From Schmidtea polychroa (taxonomy: Eukaryota): a stretch of DNA of 57,120 bases. Positions within the stretch are counted from its first letter, which is position 1, and each line of letters begins with the position of its first letter. The notes beneath the pieces are model-generated. The model was not told the DNA's origin. It searched no databases and saw nothing but the letters and a program-made list of their open reading frames with translations. The stretch covers positions 14,018,881 through 14,076,000 of the forward strand of contig CM097887.1 of the NCBI GenBank assembly GCA_044892525.1, given 5' to 3'. Below are positions 12,572 through 25,647 of this stretch, in pieces. The position numbers and the translations under genes were made by a program.

Positions 12572-15500
12572 CTTGCCATCGCCATGCGTAGCCACATAGA
12601 TTTATTTAGCACAATTCTGTTATTCCATGGATATGATTTGTTGGTGGTGTTGGTTCCAGAATGCGTATGCGTCACTATAAATAAATCTCAAGAAATATTA
12701 TAAAGTAAATGTTTACAAGCAGGCATAATTGTCATATCGCCTGGTGTTTTTGCGAAAGGTAATGGTGGTCGAACCAGTTCCAATAGCCGCCCTAATAGTT
12801 GGAAGGTTGGCTCGATAATGTNNNNNNNNNNNNNNNNNNNNNNNNNNNNNNNNNNNNNNNNNNNNNNNNNNNNNNNNNNNNNNNNNNNNNNNNNNNNNNN
12901 NNNNNNNNNNNNNNNNNNNNNNNNNNNNNNNNNNNNNNNNNNNNNNNNNNNNNNNNNNNNNNNNNNNNNNNNNNNNNNNNNNNNNNNNNNNNNNNNNNNN
13001 NNNNNNNNNNNNNNNGAACATTTCATTCTTTTAAAAATAATAATTCAAATAATATATTTTTAAATTTTAACATTTAGAATTTAATTTAGTAATTTATTAA
13101 TTATTTAATTTAACAAACAACAATCGATGCATACAATATACAAAAAATTATTTAAAAACATTTAAAACACAAGTATTCGCTGCATTCTGCACATTAATTT
13201 TTGGATCCAATCATGGGCGCGCGAAATTTTTATTTTCTGGGGGGGGGCGCAAAATATTTTTAGTAATGTTCTAATGTAGTTTAAATTTACTGTAGCGTAT
13301 TTGTATGGGGAATGAACGGACAAGACACTGTAGTAATGAAGGGCATACTGTAGCAACAAATTTTTTATTATTTTTTTTCATTATTTGACTATTTTCAATA
13401 AATCCAATTGAATATGTTATTAGCAGCAGAATGTGTATATTGCCTAACTAACACACTCTTATTAGTGACTTATATTCAGATTCACGGAACTAATAATTCC
13501 AGATCAAATTGCACCCATTAAAATCAAGCAAAATTACACTTTTTTTATTTACACGTGAGTGTACTTTTCCGGTTTGTATAAAACCCGCAAAAATGACACG
13601 TGAGTGTGATGTCCATATTTTCTGCTTATAGCAATTTGAAAAGATGTATTTTAGCTCGATGACTTTTTTCAAAAATTCATTACTAAAATTAAACATGAAT
13701 ATGCAAATAAGATGTAAATTACGAGTATATGTTAATGATGATTTAACCCTTTCGTGGACAAAAATATTTGTTCCATTTTTATATTAGTTTTGTTTGGAAA
13801 TGGATGCTGGTCGCAGAATATAGATTCCTAATTGATCATTTATTTATAAACTCAAACAATGTAGAAATATTACAATAATGATAAAATTTTATATACAGTA
13901 AAACTCGTTTAAATGAACTTTCAAGGGGGCACGAAAATTATGTTCATTTAGCATGGTGTTCAATTAAGAATTAAAAAAATTAAGAAAAAAATGTTTTAAT
14001 TAATTATTATAAGACAAGAACAAATACATCTATATTTAAAGTTTGAAAAATAAGATATTTTTGTTTGTTTTTAATTTGAAATACTTATCTTATTCTCTAA
14101 ATTGTGAATCATTTCACGTTCATCTTTTGTATCAGCTACATCACATAGAAAATAATATCTTAATATATCCACAACGCGCGAAAACAATACCGCGACCTTG
14201 AAAATCGCGACTTGTGAGCAGAAAGATTACATAACAACAAAATACATACAACTAAAGTACTTACAATCTCAATCATAGTGATTTAACTATTTTAATATAT
14301 TATTATTAATAGTTTTGCTTAAATAATGTTAGGTTTTATTTTGTTTCATTTTATAGTAAATCTTTTTGATGATGTTTTTATACAGTTTGGGGAGAAAAAT
14401 AATTAGTAGATTGGAAAGGTTAAGAAAAACAAGCTAAAACTAAAAAGTTAGGAATTGAAAAAGTAAAAAAATAGAAAAAATGAAAATGAAAGAATAAAAA
14501 TAATTCATTTAATACATTACTGTGACGCGCGGTCATGATCGACGCTATTATTAATAGCTCGCGGTTATGATGGGCGCGGTTATTAAAGTAAACCGTTTTT
14601 TAGTAAGACGTTGAAATTCATCTTCCTCACTTTGCTCATCCGTTTCGTCTGCGATTTCTTTATCTTTTTCAAGGATGGTTTCAACGATTTCCTGGTCAGC
14701 AATGATAGCCGATACAGCAAGCTCTTCGTCGCAATCAACATAATCTTCAAAATTAAAGTTCTTTGGTGTTATATTGTTTGATTGAAGCTGAAAAATTGCA
14801 GACTCAATGGGTTCTATATCGTTATAGTCATTGTTTGATCAAATCCACATTTTTGAAGCAATTTTGTATGATTTAACAATATATATGTGTGTATGTGTTA
14901 AAGTACTATTTTATCATAATTTTCGGTGATGGGAGACCGTCTTCAACGGCTCACGAAAGGGTAAATTTATATTTTTATGAAATTCAATATTTACTAACAC
15001 ATTAGTACTATAATTAGCCTAAAATTAATGATAGAGACAACCAACCACTTATTCTTAGTTTGGTAAAAGTTTGCCACTTTTATTTGATGTTTTTCTAATT
15101 TTCCACATTTTGAAAAACAATCTGTGACAAACTACAATAAATAAATCACAAGTTAAAAATTTTAAAAAACCCTTGACAGTCGGCTTTGAGAACTTTCGGC
15201 GCTTTTATTGAATTTATTGACACAATATATTTTCATTAAAACTATAAAACAAGGAATAAGAAAATACTGAGTATTTAAAAATATTATTATAACTAGGGGC
15301 TCTGCCCCTGTTCGCTTCGCTTCACCAACCCCGTTAGAACGTGGGGTTAATGTTAAAGGTAATATCCAGGGTGTTCTTGGACAGGAGTAAAATTCAGTTA
15401 ATTAATATGTTTACATAACTATGATAAAAGATAATAGCATAAACCGTTTATAAATAATATAGAAAGATAAGTACAAAAGAATAAATACTTCATAAAAAAA

Positions 15501-16551
15501 ATTTTAAAAAAAAATAAATATAAAAAAAAGTAAAATACGGATGGAAGGGACCCTTAGCTTTTTTATGTATAGAGAGATATTATATTTAATAAAACATTGA
15601 CTATGAATCAGTTAATGACCAAAGTCTCCAAATTTATTTACTCTCCATAATAACAAGCTCCTTCCATAATAACATCTCCTTCAGAACTGATATTCAATGA
15701 TAAATTTAACAAAAAATGTAATAAGGCTTATAATATAAAAAAGATAAGTATTTTGACGGGTGACTGTTCCCCATTTATTTAGAGTTAAAGTTTTGGAAAC
15801 ACAAAGACAGAAAATGCATCCATATGCGTAAATGTGAGTGATAATGCTATTTATTGTGAGAATTTCAGTATTATAAATAATGTAATAGAACCGTACAATT
15901 AGACAGGGGTCCCTAGTAACTCAATACTTTATTTCGATGGAATTTGATATAAATTCAAAAATTGTGAAAAACATTACAATTAGAGAAATAGAATTTATAT
16001 CTTTTCTAACTCGATTGGATTTCAGGCACAAACGCAGTCTTTCTACTGCATATTGGAGAGAAGGGGATATTCAACTCCTTTTCCCGGTCTCCCTAATTAC
16101 ACATCTTTATCAATAACAAACAATAAATGTTTCCATTACTTGTCTGAACATTTGCTCTTGCCACATTTCAACCCATTTGTTATGAATTGACCAAATTTTC
16201 GATGGGTGGGATATGTCGGCTGCGTGTAACATGAATTGTATAGTTTTCATTTTATCCACTCTGATTTTATTTTTTTAATACACACTGGGAAATAATATAA
16301 TTTTACTCATTCCCACTAGCCATTTCTGCCTTTATCGTTTTTAAATGGTAAAAATGTTGAGAATGATCACAACTCAGAACACATTCAATAACTGATTTAC
16401 GAAATTCACTATAAATAATAATGATTATAATAATAATAATAATTGTCAATTTTAAGAAATCCCTTTCAATCAATCCAGTACTAAGCTGGAATGTTTAATG
16501 TTTGTTTGCCTATAAAATTCATTATCTGCCGTTTTATTGGATATAAATCTG

Positions 16552-16599
<48 letters not shown>

Positions 16600-19500
16600 T
16601 GCATCACGTGCAATGTATACAAAGAAATATACATTGGAAGTACACTCAAGACCTTGCGCAAAGAATTAAAAAACGTCTAGATCCTGTTGGAAAATCTTCG
16701 GTAAACAGACATCTCCAATAATGTCAACCAAGAAAGGAAAGAAAAAATATTTCAATCAAATATTAGCCAATGGAAACATCCAAAAAAATATGTCAGATAT
16801 AAAGAAGTAATTCTCATCATAAACAAACGGCCAACAATCAACACTAAAGAAGAGATTAATGAAATCATCAATTTGATTTGTTGTTATTGACCTTAAGAAT
16901 AGCTTTTAAAAAAATTAAATTACAAATTAAAAAATAATAATTTAAAATAATATATAAAAATAGATCAAATATACTTTTAAAAAATCATTAGGAATAACAA
17001 TCAAAAGAGAAACATTTTTTAAAAATATTTAAATTGCCTATATAAATAATTATTGGAAACTATGTCTTATAAATATTTTAAGATATTATTTATTAAGAGG
17101 TTTCTATGAGCTAATTATAAAAGCTTTAAAAATTAAAAAAAATTTCTAGGGTTTCGTTTTGAATTTTAGAGGATATTTAGTTGAAAAAATTTTTAAATTT
17201 TAAATTCTTTAGAAAAAGTTTATTATTATTTTTTTTAAGAAAAAGAAAATAAAAGCGAAGATCGGAAAGAATTTTGGAAAAAAGAAGAAACTAAATTCCA
17301 GGAAATTGCCAAGCACTATCTTATAGTCGAATTTTTTTACAAATGTATAAAATACATTATTTGCAGCAAAAGGCTTAAATTATTATTTAATTGTTTTAAA
17401 TCTAATTAATGCTGCTACCAAGAAATTTTATTATTATTATAACTTATATATCTATTATAATAAACCTGTATTCATTCTTATTAAGTGCACGGATGAAATT
17501 GCATTTGGGATTCTGAAGGATTTTGAAAACAGCAGATACGTGATGATTTTCCCTGATTTGGCTATCGTTATAAATCAGTCCTAGTTGATCATTTGTTTTA
17601 ATAAGAAAAGCATTGCTATATCCGGGATCATCATAATCATGAATAACGGCAGAAAATAAAAACACGAAAACTTGGAGATCTGTTATCCAATGCTGAATTT
17701 GATTGTATTTTTGAATATTATCGAAACAATAAAAATGTTAATTTTAAAAATTCTATCAAATTTAGATAATTAATAATTTCAATTTAACATGAATTTCCGG
17801 CACATCCTTTTATAATAATTCAACAAAAAATTAGAATTGCAGTGAGTAGATAGATATGAGCGTTCTAGGCCACTATAAATTATCCAGGCCCTAAGATTTT
17901 TTACAACAAGGAAATGGTAATATTGATTTTGAAGTGCAAATTTAAGCAATAGTAAGGGACCAAATCTTTCTTGTCTTTAATCAGAGCTTTAGAGCAAACA
18001 ACACGCACCTTCAATCTACACTTTTTAAATCTATTACTTTTTCATGCTAAGAATCCCAATGTGAAAGAGCCTTTATTTATTTATATATTTTTTCACTGTT
18101 CCTTTGATTGTAAATTCGCTCTACGACCAACTGACAATTGGTTATTAGTCATTCCTTTTTACGCGTTTCTCTCTTTTAAATAATTCAATTAACCAACATC
18201 AAAACAATTTTATGAGAAATATTTTCCTAAAAGCAAAATAATTAAGTAGCAGACATTCCGCCTATATGCGAACTGACTCTGTATAATTTCGTTTTGATGG
18301 AAACTAATTATTTTAGCTTGTCAATTACCGCTCGTGGTTTTTAAATGGCTCGAGTTTTCCACATACTACGAAATTATTTATCTCTAATTAGTTTGTATTT
18401 GTCAAATATCTTTTCTGGGGACCCCCATTGATTTTATATTATTATATCTGTATTAGTCTGATCTTTGATATCGATACATATCTATTTCTCCCGAATTACG
18501 CCAATTTTTAATTGATTAATCACAGCCACCTTCTAGTGATTTTATGCCGAAAATTCGTGAATATCAAAAAAAACCTTTAATGATTCATAGTCAAATTTTT
18601 AATAAATGCAATGCCAATTGAAAAGAAATCAGATGTGAAAAGTTTTTATAATTTATAACAGTGTTTAACAAACTATTTTTTTTGTGCCCCAAAAATTTAC
18701 AAAAAATTTTTTGGTGACCCCAACTATTAAATTAATTAAAATTTTTTCAAATGAAGAAATTTAGTGTATTTCATTCATCTTAACACACAAACACAACATA
18801 TACACCAAACACCCCTTAGATACGTTTCCTATAATATAAGAAAAAAATCAATAATCTTACAATAGAGAAACATACATACTTACTTTGATTTCACGCTGAT
18901 GTTCTAATTACTAGTACAATGAGATACATCTTACACTATCGAAATCTAAAAGTGATACACCTAATTCCGAAAGTCAACATAGTCTATAATCTAAAAAAAA
19001 TCAATTTATAGTATAGGAGCACACAAACTTACCTGTGTGTAAAAATGTAATGCTTCGAAAGTTAACATATTTATTATAGGAATCGAAAAAGTGACAGAAA
19101 AATAATTGAACATACCAACACAAAACACATAATGAAAAATGCATGCAAATTTATTATAGCGTTTTTTTCCGAAATTATACATTGATTAACATATTGTTAA
19201 CATATTATTATTTTTAATATATTAAAAAATAATGGAGGAAAATTTTTTTTATCTAGAATCGGAAAACTCTACTTTGGTCTGTGGAAAAAGTTGATAAAAC
19301 ATTGTAAAATCTATTTATAAAATATTTTTGAAGTTAATATTTCTTTGGATTTTCAGATATTTCTCTGGAAACGCTACCTTTTTGCCAAGGTGAAGATCTG
19401 GCAATGTAAGATTTATTCATTAGAATACAAAACATTAAATTAAAAAGAAATTAATATTTTCATAGAATTACAGAAAATGACAAAATTCGGCTTAAATTTA

Positions 19501-21479
19501 AAAAACTATTTTATAAAAAAAATAATAAAAAATATCTTTATTTATTTATTGTTAAAAATATATCTAACTTACATTTTATCGAAATAATTCCAAATAAATT
19601 CATAAAATGTCATAAAATTCCGAAAAAACACCTGAAATTTAATTATCAATATTTTATATTATAAATGCTGGCTAAAAGTAATATTTAGGAACTTCAATAA
19701 AATCAAAATTCAAGTCTTCAAAGTTACTTAAAATTAAAAATATTACCTGAAAACGATTTTTCAAAAATGAAGTTAAGTAATCTCTGTCACATAAATCCTC
19801 AACTGGTGTGCACACCAACGTATATTATAGACAATGTTAACTTTCGGAATTAGGTGTAGAAAAATTAAACACTGCACACAAACACAAACACAACACATAC
19901 TAAAAATCACATGCAAAATTTCGATTCATAGAAATGCGCCGCTGAGATACGTTTCTATAATAACTTTATTTTGAGAAGAAAATATGAGAAAAAAAATGAT
20001 CGCTGAAAATGTTTTTAATGTATTTTTTAAAGAAACTATGTTAAATTATCATGAAAATGACGAAATATCATCGTAAGAATTATTTTTGAGTTAGAATTAA
20101 GTTAGAATTTCATTAGAATTTCTAATATTTGTTTTAAAAATATTTTAGAAAATAAATTTTTGGCGATTGATTTAATTATTTAATTATAATTTAAAATATA
20201 TCTGACTTCCAAAATACTTCAAAATAAATTTCATAAAATTCCTAAAAAACCTGAAATTTAATTAAAAATAATTTATAATACAATTGTTGACTAAAAGTAA
20301 TATTTAAGAACTTGAATAATGATCTCATATTTATATATGGATCAAAATTCAAGTCTTGAAATTTACTTAAAATAAAACATCTTACCTGAAAGCCATTTCA
20401 AAATGGCTAAATTAAATTTCTAAAAAATTGACTAAATGATGTGCATGCTAACCACCAATATAGAAAATGTATCTCAGTGGTGTTTGGTGTAGCAAAATAT
20501 GTATATAAACTTTTGATATGTAAAAATATTGAATGGGAAAAAAACATTTTAAAATTTTATTATTTACAATTTATTAAAAAAAACATGACTGTTAAAAAAT
20601 TTTCAGCAAAATTCGGAAAACTTATACAGAAAATAACGAAATAACTTCGTACGATTTATTTTACAAATTATTAAAAATATAATATTTATTTACAATTTCA
20701 GATATTTCTCTTCAAACTTTGTCTTTTTGCTATGTCAACCATTGCAAATATTCAACCAGGTCCTTTTACTTCACGGGGAAAATCGAAAATTTTAATAACT
20801 TAACGTCTAAGTTAGTATGGATGTACCCGTAAAGCGTTAAATGTCATTGCAAATCAAAGTATGGCTGTGGTCATACAGACCTTAATCGAATGTATACGTC
20901 AGACAACGGCATCTATCGGCTTACCCCAATAATATTTTAAAAACTAAATGAAGTTAGCGGTATTATCAACTTTACAAAAGCGATTTCAAAGTATGTGTGA
21001 CGTCACAATCAATCTTTTGTGGTGTTTAAAACCAGTTTGAACACGTGCACGCATGTCATCGCGTATATGTAAGTTGTTGAACACGGTTTTATTTAAAAAA
21101 ACGTATTTTGTTTGGTGTTTTTGTGTTTTATTGACATTGTTTTTATTTTTTGCATACCCTTATTTACGTACTATTTAATAGCGGAAAGCCCGTTGGTAAT
21201 TTTGTGTTGTGGAATTTTTGTGAGTGTATTGATTGTGATTTTATAATATATTGTTTCATATAAAGTTATAAACACCTGAAATAATCATACGATTTTTCAA
21301 TAAAAACTTTTGTTCCTAGTTTTTCTATCATTATATACAGTTTAATTAATGTAAACAGTTTTTTTTATTATAAATGAATAATCTTATTGTTTTTTTTGGA
21401 TTAATAATGTAGTTGTTCTGTTTCGTTAATTATATATTAATTGGTTTTATTTTAATTTTAGATAATACATTCCCTGTGC

Positions 21480-21543
<64 letters not shown>

Positions 21544-24500
21544 TACAATTCCATAAATAACCAATTTGAGTACCCGGGTATTATATTCAGAACTTTACGG
21601 TAAGTTTTAATTTTTTTACCCAATTATTGTGTCGGAAGTCGTCAAACGTAATACATTTTATTTTAAATTTTTATATAAAAATAACTCACTGGGTATAGGT
21701 ATGTACATCATACCAAAACTCACTACCATAGAGGTTAAAGGAGATAGATTTACTTGGTTATTAACTTTCTTTTTTTTAATAAATGATAGTTAAAAATATA
21801 TCTAACTCACTTTAAATCGAAATAAATCAAAAATTCAATGAAAATAATTTAAAAATAAAGATTATAACTAACCATCATTTTATAATTCTGGATGAAGAAA
21901 TGGACTGTCTGTAATACATCAGATGCATGGACACTATTGTAATATGGATGGCTGTTTTGATTGTATCCAATCTCTATATTGTTCAGGAATTCTTCCAAAA
22001 AATCAGATGAAACCTTTAGTAGTTAAAAAACGAATCTTTTTCAAATATTAAATAACTTTGTATTTCCTGAGAATATTGTGATGTAGAAATATATAAACTG
22101 TCATATATTTGAGAGTATGCCCATTACACTTCTTGTCCAGGCTCAGGATATCGAAATCCCACTCATGAATGCTGTTCTAAACACATTACTCAAACAAATA
22201 ATATTAAAGGAAAGTTTGGAAATTTTAATGAGGAGAAATTTATGTCAAATTCAAGTCAAATACAACTTTATGGAATTTCAACGAATAATAAAAATCGCCA
22301 TTCGTACTTCTTTTTCACCATATATTTCGATACTATCACTATCATCATCAAGTTACCTACATTCACGACGGATGAATAACTATACTATATTGATAATATA
22401 TAAACAAATTATAAAATCTATAAATTTTAAATTATAAATAAAAATGTTAAACAATTTTTTTTTTAAATATTTTTAATAATCGACTATATTTAAACTTTTA
22501 AAATTATTTAACATAACAATTATTAATATCCATCAACATACAAAAACTTAATTAAAAACATTCAACACACAAGTATTCACTGCATTCTGCACATTGATTT
22601 TAGGATTAAAAGTTCTTATCAATAATGCTTTACATATCACAGGCTCAAAATAATTATCAAAATTTTTTGATAAGATTTTAAAATCAGGCATTCCTAATTC
22701 TTTCATACAGACTTTATTATGATCCTTAATATTGGACACTCCCTTCGGTCGACAGTGTTCTTGAACTCGAGTACAGAGATGACGGGAAGTCTCTCCAATG
22801 TATGTGGCAATACACCCATTACATGTGAATTGATAAACGAGATCCTAACACAATCCAACCGGCGTTTGAGATTTACTAACAAACATACTACGTACTTCGC
22901 ACGATTTTGAAACAATTCTATAATTCAACTTACTCAGCTGTTTACCAATCTTTCTTTTCAAATCTTTATATCCTTCAAAATACAGCAATACCATCATATA
23001 TTTTGGCTCATCTTGTTTGTTAGTATCAATACTCATATTCACTACATCATTCGACATATCAGTCAATTTACATTCATTCATAAATAAAAAAATTGAAATT
23101 TCAGCAATTATTTTGAAAATAATAAAATTTTTAGTATGCTTTTGAATTTACAAATAACATTCCAAGTTGACTGGATTGGGAATATTTCACGTTTAACTGC
23201 ACTAAATAGACTTTTATTTGATTTTTTATATCATCCTTTGGATCTGGGTCCGTCCTTGAAAATCTGGCTGCGTCTACCAGCACAATTTGTAAAATTGGTT
23301 TTGGTCACTCTAATGAAACAAGAAATTATGTTAAAGCTGAAATTCTTCACTATTATCATAGATGGAGCCAGTGTTATGAAATTAATAAAGCAATAAATGA
23401 TGGGATGGCACATCCACTACAAATAGCATATCGATGGGGATCATTGGCTTCAAATTTCTAAAAAGATGACTATTTGAGAATGGAAGCTCACGTGGTAATT
23501 ATTTGAAAGGATGATATAAATATTTAAAAACGATAAAGCCAACCAGTATCGAGTCAGAAAGAGAATTTTCTTCTGCAGTGTTAGTTTGTAAAAAAAATAA
23601 TGAAGCTTCTTTGGTGACAAAGTTCTGGACAAAGTCATGTCTCTCAGATGCAACTTTTAGCAATAAAGAAACTTATTTATTCATTCTGTATGACATACAT
23701 TCATTTGACCTACATAAAACTGCCATACATTCAATTGACCTACATAAAGCTGCCATACATTCAATTGACCTACATAAAGCTGCCATACATTCAATTGACC
23801 TACATAAAGCTGGCATACATCCAATTGACCTACATAAAGCTGCCATACATTCAATTGACCTACATAAAGCTGGCATACATTCAATTGACCTACATAAAGC
23901 TGGCATACATTCAATTGACCTACATAAAGCTGCCATACATTCAATTGACCTACATAAAGCTGGCATACATCCAATTGACCTACATAAAGCTGGCATACAT
24001 TCAATTGACCTACATAAAGCTGCCATACATTCAATTGACCTACATAAAGCTGGCATACATCCAATTGACCTACATAAAGCTGGCATACATCCAATTGACC
24101 TACATAAAGCTGCCATACATTCAATTGACCTACATAAAGCTGCCATACATTCAATTGACCTACATAAAGCTGGCATACATTCAATTGACCTACATAAAGC
24201 TGCCATACATCCAATTGACCTACATAAAGCTGGCATACATTCAATTGACCTACATAAAGCTGCCATACATTCAATTGACCTACATAAAGCTGGCATACAT
24301 TCAATTGACCTACATAAAGCTGGCATACATCCAATTGACCTACATAAAGCTGCCATACATTCAATTGACCTACATAAAGCTGCCATACATTCAATTGACC
24401 TACATAAAGCTGCCATACATTCAATTGACCTACATAAAGCTGGCATACATCCAATTGACCTACATAAAGCTGGCATACATTCAATTGACCTACATAAAGC

Positions 24501-25647
24501 TGCCATACATTCAATTGACCTACATAAAGCTGGCATACATCCAATTGACCTACATAAAGCTGGTATACATCCAATTGACCTACATAAAGCTGCCATACAT
24601 TCAATTGACCTACATAAAGCTGCCATACATTCAATTGACCTACATAAAGCTGCCATACATTCAATTGACCTACATAAAGCTGGCATACATCCAATTGACC
24701 TACATAAAGCTGGCATACATTCAATTGACCTACATAAAGCTGGCATACATCCAATTGACCTACATAAAGCTGGCATACATCCAATTGACCTACATAAAGC
24801 TGGCATACATCCAATTGACCTACATAAAGCTGGCATACATTCAATTGACCTACATAAAGCTGCCATACATTCAATTGACCTACATAAAGCTGCCATACAT
24901 TCAATTGACCTACATAAAGCTGCCATACATTCAATTGACCTACATAAAGCTGCCATACATTCAATTGACCTACATAAAGCTGCCATACATTCAATTGACC
25001 TACATAATCTGTCATACATTGAACTAACATAAATTTCTTACTGTTAAATAATCAACTAATATTAGAAAAACTGAAAGCATTTTATTATGAGCTATTAAAA
25101 ATCGGAATTTACTTCCATTAATTTCGCTATAGCTGGCGGAATATTCATGGCCGCACTTTCCGTTGACTTTTTAAATATTCTGAATTTCAATTCTTGGTAA
25201 AATAACTAATTATCAATAAGAAGCACTTTTCCACCATCAGCATAGCTAGAATTGCATTAACTACAGCTTTAAATCTAGGTCGTTCAGTTCGCTTTTTAGG
25301 GGCGGCTATGCCAGTAAATGTGCTTGCAAGCCAATCCTTGATTTCTGGGGGCATGTCATCGATTTCGGTGACCTCGTCTTCGTCATTCAAACTATAACGC
25401 ATTTTAATAAAAAATAATTTAATAATCTTAAATAACAAATTTGGGTCGTTTGCAAGTTTCTCCATTGTCCCAGCTATGTCTTCAAGCGCTATCAATAATT
25501 CCTCTTTATCCATATCGACCTTTTTAAGCGAATCCACTAATCCACTTAGCCTTATATCTTTAATTAATTTAACAAAATTCATTCAGCAATATACCTTGTA
25601 CAACAAGTAATATAAACTTTCACCTTACTTGTTTCAGCTTTCGCCAT
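12572..25647 (-). CDS. PDE1: Ca2+/calmodulin-type cyclic nucleotide phosphodiesterase PDE1-like gene with substituted catalytic residues
   Basis: GT-AG exons with consistent phases: 25595-25647, 25437-25550, 25227-25391, 25113-25179, 22057-22176, 21873-22013, 17466-17692, 16307-16408, 16140-16260, 16011-16092, 12717-12821 (5' end in the gap) and 12572-12674. Motifs include KDWLASTF, HEWDFDIL, PYYNSVHASDV, HDYDDPG, ENHH, HAADISHP, QGDREKEL and IIEPTF. The terminal exon is unresolved (candidate acceptor at 12393-12394). Confidence 0.92.
13016..13205 (-). mobile_element. Short PLE 3'-end fragment, same family as 22310-23090
   Basis: 13150-13205 matches 22548-22605 (acacaagtattc.ctgcattctgcacatt). 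Confidence 0.55.
13896..14880 (-). mobile_element. Tigger/pogo-like transposon remnant
   Basis: TA|CAGTAAAACTCG terminus at 13896. Minus-strand 14590-14875 reads IQNCFK.CGF...FEDYVDCDEEL...DQEIVETIL, typical of the pogo C-terminus. Confidence 0.65.
15293..15577 (-). mobile_element. Non-autonomous Helitron (285 bp)
   Basis: On the minus strand: A|TC 5' end, GGGGCAGAGCCCC hairpin and CTAG|T 3' end. Confidence 0.6.
16620..17400 (+). mobile_element. Penelope-like element 3' end with a decayed hammerhead
   Basis: Reads YIGST-[frameshift]-QDLAQRIKKR...SSVNRHLQ*C and ILIINKRPTINTKEE. The decayed motif TTGCCAAGCACTA..TAGTCGAA lies at about 17302-17340. Confidence 0.7.
18800..20720. repeat. AT-rich repeat with internal duplication; family also at about 56710-57050
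   Basis: 19550-19760 resembles 20190-20400. ACACAAACTTACCTGTGTGTA and ACAGAAAATGACAAAATTCGG are shared with 56720-57055. Confidence 0.55.
22310..23090 (-). mobile_element. Penelope-like element 3' part (linker plus GIY-YIG endonuclease) in a PDE1 intron
   Basis: Reads LLYFEG...SQTPVGLC*DLVYQFTCNGCIATYIGETSRHLCTRVQEH...FKIL...KALLIRTFNPKINVQ, with one premature TAG. Confidence 0.85.
23140..23690 (+). mobile_element. hAT transposase C-terminal remnant
   Basis: IKPTSIESEREFSSA matches the hAT PxTSVxSERxFS motif. Confidence 0.55.
23701..25020. repeat. 30-bp minisatellite, 44 units
   Basis: Unit YCAATTGACCTACATAAAGCTGSCATACAT, with nearly all variation at two sites. Confidence 0.98.

What the first reader, a model, noticed from the sequence alone, without database searches (positions are those of the whole stretch)
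16011..22013. Intact PDE1 gene with a dead-looking active site (candidate pseudo-phosphodiesterase)
Seen: all visible exons are frame-consistent with canonical splice sites and no stops. Yet NPYHN is HPYYN, HDxxH is HDYDD, TD is CD and EFF is EQM, while the metal ligands (xxH, HD, AD), ENHH and the invariant substrate Gln (EIQ) remain. Established (PDE4 numbering): H160 is the general acid and H204 lines the Mg site. Inference: a cyclic-nucleotide and calmodulin-binding non-hydrolytic sensor or sink, or a dominant-negative dimer partner. Class I pseudo-PDEs are rarely described.
Basis: partly seen in the sequence, partly recalled or inferred. Interest (0 to 1): 0.72.

Follow-up and report, generated by a model that had tools for sequence, protein, structure and literature searches.

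The report
Divergent PDE1 gene lacking catalytic residues
This is an intact but fast-evolving extra copy of a calmodulin-type cyclic-nucleotide phosphodiesterase gene that has replaced the residues needed to cut cAMP/cGMP while keeping its fold and metal site, so it is probably a non-cutting or altered relative of the enzyme; whether it is expressed is not shown.

Summary
A minus-strand PDE1-type gene has at least 9 exons (window 25582 down to 12688). The finding's span covers exons 4-8 only. Exons 1-8 splice through GT-AG introns into a 405-aa open frame, 36-40% identical to PDE1 proteins (E about 1e-96).

It carries the PDE1 N-terminal domain (PF08499) and the catalytic domain (PF00233).

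- **Changed:** HPYYN, HDYDD, SCDHS and EQMF are all present. I also found L>R before ENHH, M>H in TDMS, D>S in CDR and L/I>W.
- **Kept:** the four metal ligands, ENHH and the substrate Gln.

Both members of the His160-Glu339 proton-relay pair are replaced (Y, Q).

The genome has four other PDE1 genes, all canonical. All 17 other HDxxH sites I read keep the second His.

In a tree the gene sits inside PDE1, beside the paralogue at C2:167.9 Mb, on a branch about 4.6 times the median length.

The intact frame, coding-type base composition and 38 of 49 invariant residues kept argue against a long-dead pseudogene.

The first codons of exon 9 lie in an N run.

Verdict: a plausible class I pseudo-PDE or re-tooled PDE; moderate interest.

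The parts
25227..25582 (-). Exon 1. ATG at 25582 follows an in-frame TGA. Encodes the N-terminal regulatory region with the PDE1-specific PDEase_I_N domain (..PPEIKDWLASTF..RPRFKAVVNAILAMLMVE). Ends in phase 2 at donor GTGCTT.
   Evidence: (PF08499 E=3.2e-15)
25392..25436 (-). Possible extra 45-nt in-frame intron inside exon 1 (GTTATTT...GTTATAG). It coincides with a 14-15 aa insertion relative to other PDE1s. The frame stays open either way.
   Evidence: inference
22308..22379 (-). Exon 2 (YSSVVNVGNLMMIVIVSKYMVKK). Aligns without gaps to the YRRMSS..PPNV..FLK segment of PDE1. Its introns lie at the same places as in the C3:55.2M paralogue.
22057..22171 (-). Exon 3 (IHEWDFDILSLDKKCNGHTLKYM..RKYK).
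21873..22013 (-). Exon 4 (VSSDFLEEFL..GYNQNSHPYYNSVHASDVLQTVHFFIQNYKMM). Tyr at 21939-21941 replaces the proton-donor His (PDE4D His160). The Zn ligand His is kept at 21927-21929.
17466..17692 (-). Exon 5 ([47 protein letters not shown]..NEY). HD is kept at 17636-17641. Asp at 17627-17629 replaces His204. Arg at 17552-17554 replaces the Leu before ENHH.
   Evidence: (PF00233 E=1e-23)
16307..16408 (-). Exon 6 (SEFRKSVIECVLSCDHSQHFYHLKTIKAEMASGN). Cys at 16369-16371 replaces Thr271. His at 16363-16365 replaces Met273.
16140..16260 (-). Exon 7 (EVDKMKTIQFMLHAADISHPSKIWSIHNKWVEMWQEQMFRQ). The Zn ligand Asp is kept. Gln at 16152-16154 replaces Glu339, Met at 16149-16151 replaces Phe340, and Trp at 16161-16163 replaces the Ile336 equivalent.
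16011..16092 (-). Exon 8 (GDREKELNIPFSPICSRKTAFVPEIQS). The invariant Gln is kept at 16015-16017. Ser at 16045-16047 replaces the Asp of CDR. It ends in phase 1 at the same intron position (after SQIG) as all four paralogues.
12822..13015 (.). N run. It hides the acceptor and about six first codons of the last exon (the GFIDF segment with the clamp Phe).
12688..12821 (-). Visible part of the last exon (IIEPTFQLLGRLLELVRPPLPFAKTPGDMTIMPACKHLLYNIS, stop TGA at 12688-12690). The tail ends about 10 residues earlier than in the paralogues.

Best explanation
This is a protein-coding, lineage-specific duplicate of a PDE1 (Ca2+/calmodulin-type, class I) phosphodiesterase gene. It most likely arose from the lineage of the paralogue at C2:167.9 Mb.

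It has evolved several times faster than its relatives. Along the way it gave up the canonical hydrolytic machinery:
- the proton donor His160 and its relay partner Glu339 became Tyr and Gln;
- His204 became Asp;
- Thr271 became Cys;
- neighbouring pocket residues were also altered.

It kept the fold, the four Zn/Mg ligands, ENHH, the purine-reading Gln and the N-terminal PDE1 regulatory domain.

The most likely product is a catalytically dead or strongly impaired PDE1-like protein. It would act by binding a ligand, a metal, calmodulin or a PDE1 partner rather than by turnover.

Shown: the gene structure, the substitutions, the uniqueness in this genome and the signs of past selection. Inferred: loss of activity and any binding role.
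For: - **Gene model:** nine exons, all GT-AG, giving a 405-aa open frame for exons 1-8 plus an open last exon.
- **Family:** PF08499 and PF00233 match single exons. The spliced product is 36-40% identical to PDE1 proteins over aa 10-404, E about 1e-96.
- **Intron positions:** shared with the multi-exon paralogues.
- **Tree:** inside PDE1, beside the C2:167.9M paralogue (support 83/90). Its end branch is 2.26 against a median of 0.49.
- **Invariant columns:** 11 of 49 columns invariant in 23 other PDE1s are changed, against 0-6 for any other sequence. These include H160Y, H204D, T271C and E339Q. The other 38 are kept.
- **Mechanism:** a review gives His160 as proton donor to O3' and Glu339 as its relay.
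- **Other copies in this genome:** all four other PDE1 genes are canonical. All 17 other HDxxH sites I read keep the His.
- **Neutral drift:** drift large enough to change about 20% of residues leaves no stop in only 0.1% of simulations.
- **Base composition:** exon GC is 35.8%, with 43/26/37 by codon position. That matches the active paralogues. Introns are 27.3%.
- **Age of the changes:** several changed codons need 2-3 base steps, so the changes are old.
- **Second witness:** an independent fragment also reads HDYDD.
Against: - The only hint is that two runs guessed to be RNA hold 0.23 and 0.18 of the sampled words, where 0.25 would be exonic.
- No orthologue with these residues appeared among 1.8 billion representatives, so conservation across species is untested.
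- The very long branch and shortened C-terminus also fit relaxed constraint.
- The start of the last exon is hidden by Ns.
- Tyr can donate a proton in some enzymes, so loss of activity is not proven.
- Pocket changes make nucleotide binding itself uncertain.
Confidence: 0.5

Rival explanations
1. It is still a working hydrolase with a re-tooled active site. The intact bimetal centre does the chemistry. Tyr206 (with Gln374) or a metal-bound water protonates the leaving group. Asp250 and Arg275 re-shape the second metal site. The substrate may no longer be cAMP or cGMP.
For: All four metal ligands, ENHH and the substrate Gln are kept. The changes look coordinated rather than random. His/Glu became Tyr/Gln. 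H204>D sits beside L229>R, giving opposite charges. M273>H adds a possible ligand. Strong past selection on the frame is evident.
Against: His160 and Glu339 are described as the acid-base pair of the cycle. The second His of HDxxH is kept in every other PDE site I read in this genome and in all 149 other database hits scanned. Mutagenesis showing that the PDE4/PDE5 equivalents of these residues are needed is from my memory and was not checked here.
Confidence: 0.2
2. It is a gene on its way out: a duplicate released from selection, recently silenced or never usefully expressed, and not yet hit by a stop or frameshift.
For: - It has the longest branch of the true PDE1s.
- It loses conserved residues in both the catalytic and the pocket positions.
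- Its C-terminal tail is shorter.
- No orthologue or spliced product appears in any protein collection.
- Four canonical paralogues make it dispensable.
- Its large introns are filled with repeats.
Against: - About 448 visible codons and eight GT-AG intron pairs are intact in a 27% GC setting where stops arise easily.
- P(no stop) is about 0.001 for the drift needed to change 20% of residues.
- 78% of invariant residues are kept against about 38% overall identity.
- The codon-position GC pattern equals that of the active paralogues.
- Multi-step codon changes show that the active-site changes are old, yet the frame survived.
Confidence: 0.27
3. It is an assembly or sequencing artefact, or a chimera of PDE1 and PDE4 pieces.
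For: Exon 5 scores higher against human PDE4 chains (72 bits) than against PDE1B (61 bits). An N run abuts the last exon.
Against: The odd residues are spread over four exons and many need 2-3 base changes. An independent fragment repeats HDYDD. The genome holds no closer PDE4-type donor for exon 5; its best own-genome matches are PDE1 paralogues at 43%. Intron positions and both flanking domains are PDE1-type.
Confidence: 0.03

Closest known systems
Canonical PDE1 (Ca2+/calmodulin-dependent phosphodiesterase; human PDE1B structures 1TAZ, 4NPV, 5B25; active Schistosoma mansoni SmPDE1, PMC7430754)
   Same: It has the PDEase_I_N regulatory domain and the PDEase_I catalytic domain. It groups with PDE1 in the tree and shares intron positions with the genome's own PDE1 genes. 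The metal ligands, ENHH, QGD and the substrate Gln are kept.
   Different: It is only 36-43% identical. Changes are YHN>YYN, HDxEH>HDYDD, TDMS>CDHS, EEFF>EQMF, CDR>CSR and LENHH>RENHH. The tail is shorter. Its branch is 4.6 times the median.
The genome's four other PDE1 paralogues (C3:55.2M, C2:167.9M, C2:109.6M, C4:53.6M)
   Same: They share the family and the intron after SQIG. The multi-exon pair shares nearly all intron positions with this gene.
   Different: All four keep NPYH(N/S), HD(Y/F)EH, TDMS, EEFF and CDR. Two of them have lost most introns, with a single 418-437 aa exon.
PDE4 catalytic domain (PDE4D2 numbering used for the mechanism)
   Same: Same fold. Exon 5 even shares the PDE4-like D-PG-SN-FLI-TN pattern.
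   Different: There are no UCR domains. The N-terminal domain and the phylogeny are PDE1. The His160-Glu339 pair that PDE4 uses is missing.
Degenerate bacterial cyclic-dinucleotide phosphodiesterase domains used as sensors (a c-di-AMP 'pseudo-phosphodiesterase' in PMC13700151; degenerate EAL and HD-GYP proteins, from memory)
   Same: The concept is the same: a phosphodiesterase fold that keeps binding features but loses catalytic residues.
   Different: The folds, substrates and kingdoms are unrelated. My paper searches found no eukaryotic class I example.

Membership tests
PDE1 (class I Ca2+/calmodulin-type phosphodiesterase) | N-terminal PDEase_I_N domain (PF08499) | tested here: met
   E=3.2e-15, 56 bits against a cut-off of 27.: 57.6 bits in the genome scan.
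PDE1 (class I Ca2+/calmodulin-type phosphodiesterase) | PDEase_I catalytic domain (PF00233) along the whole domain | tested here: met
   exons 4-7 match profile positions 1-24, 26-99, 99-131 and 144-184.: full-length alignment to PDE1 proteins.
PDE1 (class I Ca2+/calmodulin-type phosphodiesterase) | Groups with PDE1 sequences in a tree and shares their gene structure | tested here: met
   inside the PDE1 clade, beside the C2:167.9M paralogue at 83/90 support. The long branch makes the exact place unsure.: shared intron positions.
PDE1 (class I Ca2+/calmodulin-type phosphodiesterase) | Class I signature HD[LIVMFY]xHx[AG]xx[NQ]x[LIVMFY] (PROSITE pattern, recalled from memory) | tested here: not met
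   The sequence reads [12 protein letters not shown], with Asp where the second His should be.
PDE1 (class I Ca2+/calmodulin-type phosphodiesterase) | Four metal ligands (His164, His200, Asp201, Asp318 in PDE4D numbering) | tested here: met
   VHASDV, IHD and HAADISHP are present.
PDE1 (class I Ca2+/calmodulin-type phosphodiesterase) | Acid-base pair His160 / Glu339 | tested here: not met
   Tyr206 and Gln374 stand there. Their role is taken from PMC12839185.
PDE1 (class I Ca2+/calmodulin-type phosphodiesterase) | Ca2+/calmodulin binding and cAMP/cGMP hydrolysis | not testable with these tools
   This needs protein work. Several basic residues of the AIRAGIFVERIYRR helix are replaced (AILAMLMVENYSS).
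Pseudoenzyme (catalytically dead homologue kept for another role) | Clear homology to an active enzyme family, with loss of residues needed for catalysis | tested here: met
Pseudoenzyme (catalytically dead homologue kept for another role) | Gene expressed | tested here: inconclusive
There is only a word-share hint in two runs guessed to be RNA. No spliced product was found in the protein collections.
Pseudoenzyme (catalytically dead homologue kept for another role) | Kept by purifying selection | tested here: inconclusive
   The support is indirect: the intact frame against a drift simulation, coding GC pattern, and 38/49 invariants kept. No orthologue was available for dN/dS.
Pseudoenzyme (catalytically dead homologue kept for another role) | No enzymatic activity | not testable with these tools
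   This needs an assay.

The most novel reading that the evidence does not exclude
This would be the first animal class I pseudo-phosphodiesterase: a PDE1-derived protein, kept by selection, that no longer hydrolyses cAMP or cGMP. It would use its intact bimetal/Gln pocket and N-terminal regulatory domain to sense or buffer cyclic nucleotide or Ca2+/calmodulin, or to modulate canonical PDE1 partners, in a planarian-type animal with an expanded PDE1 family.
Probability: 0.3. Interest if true: 0.6.

Novelty: new variant of a known kind. Interest (0 to 1): 0.42.

Why it matters
Class I phosphodiesterases are major drug targets. Their catalytic histidines are treated as invariant.

A naturally occurring, selectively retained PDE1 copy with the His160-Glu339 relay, His204 and Thr271 replaced would be a natural experiment on the mechanism. 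It would also be a candidate for a non-catalytic role of the PDE fold in cyclic-nucleotide or Ca2+ signalling.

The gene sits in a genome with five PDE1-type genes, where the flatworm Schistosoma mansoni has one (PMC7430754). It therefore also bears on how duplicated signalling enzymes diverge.

If it proves untranscribed, it is only a slowly dying duplicate.

Tried and rejected
- **Reads.** I left out loci L006 and L026, which contain them.
- **Transcripts and orthologues.** The all-library search with exon 5 found only P0001, an 81-aa UniParc fragment that reads on into intron. Word-index searches with exon 5 and exon 1 found P0001 only and nothing. The look-up of encoding contigs had no record for P0001. 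Its cluster has one member. These blanks say little, because full-length spliced products are outside the length limits and planarian data may be missing.
- **Degenerate sites among hits.** I scanned the 150 best hits for other degenerate HDxxH or YHN sites and found none. P0140 lacks that segment altogether, which I take to be a gene-model skip.
- **Literature.** I found no paper on a eukaryotic class I pseudo-PDE or on planarian PDE1.
- **Exon 5 as a PDE4 gene conversion.** Rejected, because the genome holds no closer donor.
- **Alternative splice choices for exon 2/3.** A 13-nt micro-exon was rejected in favour of the 72-nt exon. The longer exon aligns without gaps to the YRRMSS..FLK segment and matches the paralogues' intron positions.
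- **Structure and complex prediction.** Not run. The spliced protein has no reference, and I did not type it.
- **dN/dS against paralogues.** Not attempted, because divergence is saturated at about 40% identity.
Full report
**What is there**

The window is AT-rich (24-35% GC). It lies on a 144.6-Mb scaffold of a 781-Mb genome with four very large scaffolds. That would fit a planarian such as Schmidtea mediterranea, but this is my inference and was not tested.

On the minus strand I built a gene model by reading stop-free segments. I then aligned a full-length PDE1 protein to the window with tblastn and checked every junction.

The exons are 25582-25227, 22379-22308, 22171-22057, 22013-21873, 17692-17466, 16408-16307, 16260-16140 and 16092-16011. 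All have AG acceptors and GT donors and compatible phases. They give one 405-aa open frame.

The last exon begins inside the N run 12822-13015. It is visible from 12821 (IIEPTFQLLG...) to a TGA at 12688-12690. I did not fill the Ns.

A 45-nt stretch inside exon 1 (25392-25436) has the same GTTATTT...TATAG ends as the gene's other short introns. It matches an insertion relative to other PDE1s, so it may be a further intron. The frame is open either way.

The finding's span covers exons 4-8 only.

**Family**

Exon 1 carries the PDE1-specific PDEase_I_N domain (PF08499, E=3.2e-15). Exons 4-7 match successive parts of PDEase_I (PF00233, best E=1e-23).

The spliced product aligns over residues 10-404 to PDE1 proteins at 36-40% identity, E about 1e-96.

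**The odd residues**

The residues kept are the His of HASDV, HD, ENHH, the Asp of HAADISHP and the Gln of EIQS.

In an alignment with 23 other PDE1 sequences, 49 columns are invariant. This gene changes 11 of them, while any other sequence changes 0-6. It changes a further 11 of 26 near-invariant columns.

| Class | Changes |
|---|---|
| Invariant columns | N203H, H206Y, H250D, T253Y, S263D, V274I, T317C, E374Q, L392I, D394S, F152L |
| Near-invariant columns (selected) | L275R before ENHH, M319H, F375M, T251P, T254S, H258L |

In PDE4D numbering the key changes are these:

| PDE4D residue | Residue here |
|---|---|
| His160 | Tyr |
| His204 | Asp |
| Leu229 | Arg |
| Thr271 | Cys |
| Met273 | His |
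| Ile336 equivalent | Trp |
| Glu339 | Gln |
| Phe340 | Met |

A recent review describes His160 as the proton donor to the leaving O3' and Glu339 as the residue that relays protons to and from it (PMC12839185). Both members of that pair are therefore replaced here. Glu339 is replaced by its isosteric amide.

The clamp Phe (Phe372) lies in the N run and cannot be judged.

**Context in the genome**

The genome has five PDEase_I_N matches.
- Two (C4:53.60 Mb and C2:109.64 Mb) are nearly intron-less, with 437- and 418-aa single exons and canonical NPYHN, HD(F/Y)EH, ATDMS and EEFF.
- Two (C3:55.2 Mb and C2:167.9 Mb) are multi-exon and also canonical.

All four have an intron right after SQIG, as this gene does after EIQS. 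The multi-exon pair shares nearly every other intron position with this gene, which has lost one intron inside exon 5.

All 17 other HDxxH sites that I could read among the genome's PDE loci keep the second His. So do all 149 other database hits scanned.

**Origin and rate**

A maximum-likelihood tree of 29 rows (LG+C20+F+G4) puts the gene inside PDE1, beside the C2:167.9 Mb paralogue (support 83/90). Its end branch is 2.26 changes per column against a median of 0.49. The program warns that the place of such a long row is unsure.

**Live gene or wreck?**

No stop occurs in about 448 visible codons, and all eight visible intron pairs are GT-AG.

I simulated neutral drift on a paralogue's reading frame with the local intron base composition. 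Drift that changes 20% of residues leaves the frame stop-free in 0.1% of runs. Drift that changes 11% does so in 2.5% of runs. Indels and splice-site loss were ignored, which makes the test lenient.

The gene keeps 78% of invariant residues against about 38% overall identity.

Exon GC is 35.8%, with 43/26/37% at codon positions 1/2/3. That is almost the same as in the two canonical single-exon paralogues. Introns are 27.3%.

Several altered codons need two or three base steps: Thr>Cys, Met>His, Phe>Met, Asp>Ser and Leu>Arg. The active-site remodelling is therefore old, and the frame survived it.

Together this argues that the protein was kept by selection after it lost the canonical catalytic residues. 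It does not exclude recent silencing.

**Independent witnesses and expression**

The all-library search with exon 5 found one near-identical entry, P0001. It is 81 aa, matches 74 of 75 residues, and comes from UniParc through MetaClust. It keeps HDYDD and reads on into an intron that differs from ours. I take it to be a gene call on another assembly or haplotype.

The next hits are ordinary PDE4 and PDE1 proteins at 46-52% identity. Word-index searches with exon 5 and exon 1 added nothing.

The look-up of sequencing runs listed no run on record as RNA. Two runs guessed to be RNA hold 0.23 and 0.18 of the sampled words of 16011-17700, where 0.25 of the words are purely exonic. Sibling runs of the same studies hold almost none. 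This is compatible with a spliced, condition-specific transcript, but it is only a hint.

I worked beside them afterwards.

**Mechanism**

| Reading | Odds |
|---|---|
| PDE1-like protein with an intact fold and bimetal centre that cannot run the normal acid-base cycle. It would be dead or very slow as a cNMP hydrolase and act through binding. | about 0.5 |
| Re-tooled hydrolase. Tyr/Gln, Asp250/Arg275 and His319 look like coordinated changes, perhaps for another substrate. | about 0.2 |
| Dying duplicate | about 0.27 |
| Artefact | about 0.03 |

Whether it binds nucleotide or calmodulin is open. Pocket residues and some basic residues of the calmodulin-binding helix are changed.

**Comparison and novelty**

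It is a PDE1 by domains, tree and gene structure. It fails the class I HDxxH signature and lacks the His160/Glu339 pair.

I found no paper on a eukaryotic class I pseudo-PDE or on planarian PDE1. The nearest concept in the papers found is a bacterial c-di-AMP pseudo-phosphodiesterase.

Schistosoma mansoni has one active PDE1, which was shown to be active by yeast complementation (PMC7430754). That assay would suit this gene.

I rate it a new variant of a known kind and of moderate interest. The main gaps are expression and conservation across species.

Noticed in passing
window 23694-25020: A minisatellite of 44 copies of a 30-nt unit (96% matches) lies inside the first long intron of the PDE1-like gene. 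It is open in several frames on both strands, so it shows up as long spurious ORFs.
   Followed up: partly
window 22551-22844 (minus strand): An ORF fragment has a weak GIY-YIG match (PF01541, E=0.0023; YQFTCNGCIATYIGETSRH...). It looks like the endonuclease end of a Penelope-like retroelement, and it sits in the same intron.
   Followed up: partly
G000:C4:53.60 Mb (L007 775-2088) and G000:C2:109.64 Mb (L008 1162-2418): Two canonical PDE1 paralogues carry almost the whole protein, up to SQIG, in one exon of 437 or 418 aa. The other PDE1 genes have many introns. This suggests massive intron loss or a retrocopy origin followed by duplication.
   Followed up: partly
window 17466-17692 (exon 5): This exon scores higher against human PDE4 chains (72 bits) than against PDE1B (61 bits). 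The pattern D-PG-SN-FLI-TN matches PDE4 rather than PDE1, yet the genome holds no closer PDE4 donor. Whether this is convergence or chance is unexplained.
   Followed up: partly
window 11431-11691 and 16755-16883 (minus strand): Two copies of the same repeat-derived ORF fragment (QQIK.MISLISSLVLI.G.LFMMRI...) occur, one in an intron of the gene and one downstream of it. They are probably one transposon family.
   Followed up: no
window 14554-14838 (minus strand): A 95-aa acidic ORF fragment (..DEELAVSAIIADQEIVETILEKDKEIADETDEQSEEDEF..) lies in the last intron. It has no Pfam match and may be the tail of a transposase.
   Followed up: partly
window 16553-16600 and 21487-21545: Microsatellites lie in the introns: a run of ATT/TTA repeats, and an (AT)n(GT)n run.
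   Followed up: no
window 25392-25436: A candidate 45-nt in-frame intron lies inside exon 1. Its ends are the same as those of the gene's other 43-46 nt introns. If retained, it would encode a hydrophobic-basic stretch (LLFKIIKLFFIKMRY).
   Followed up: partly
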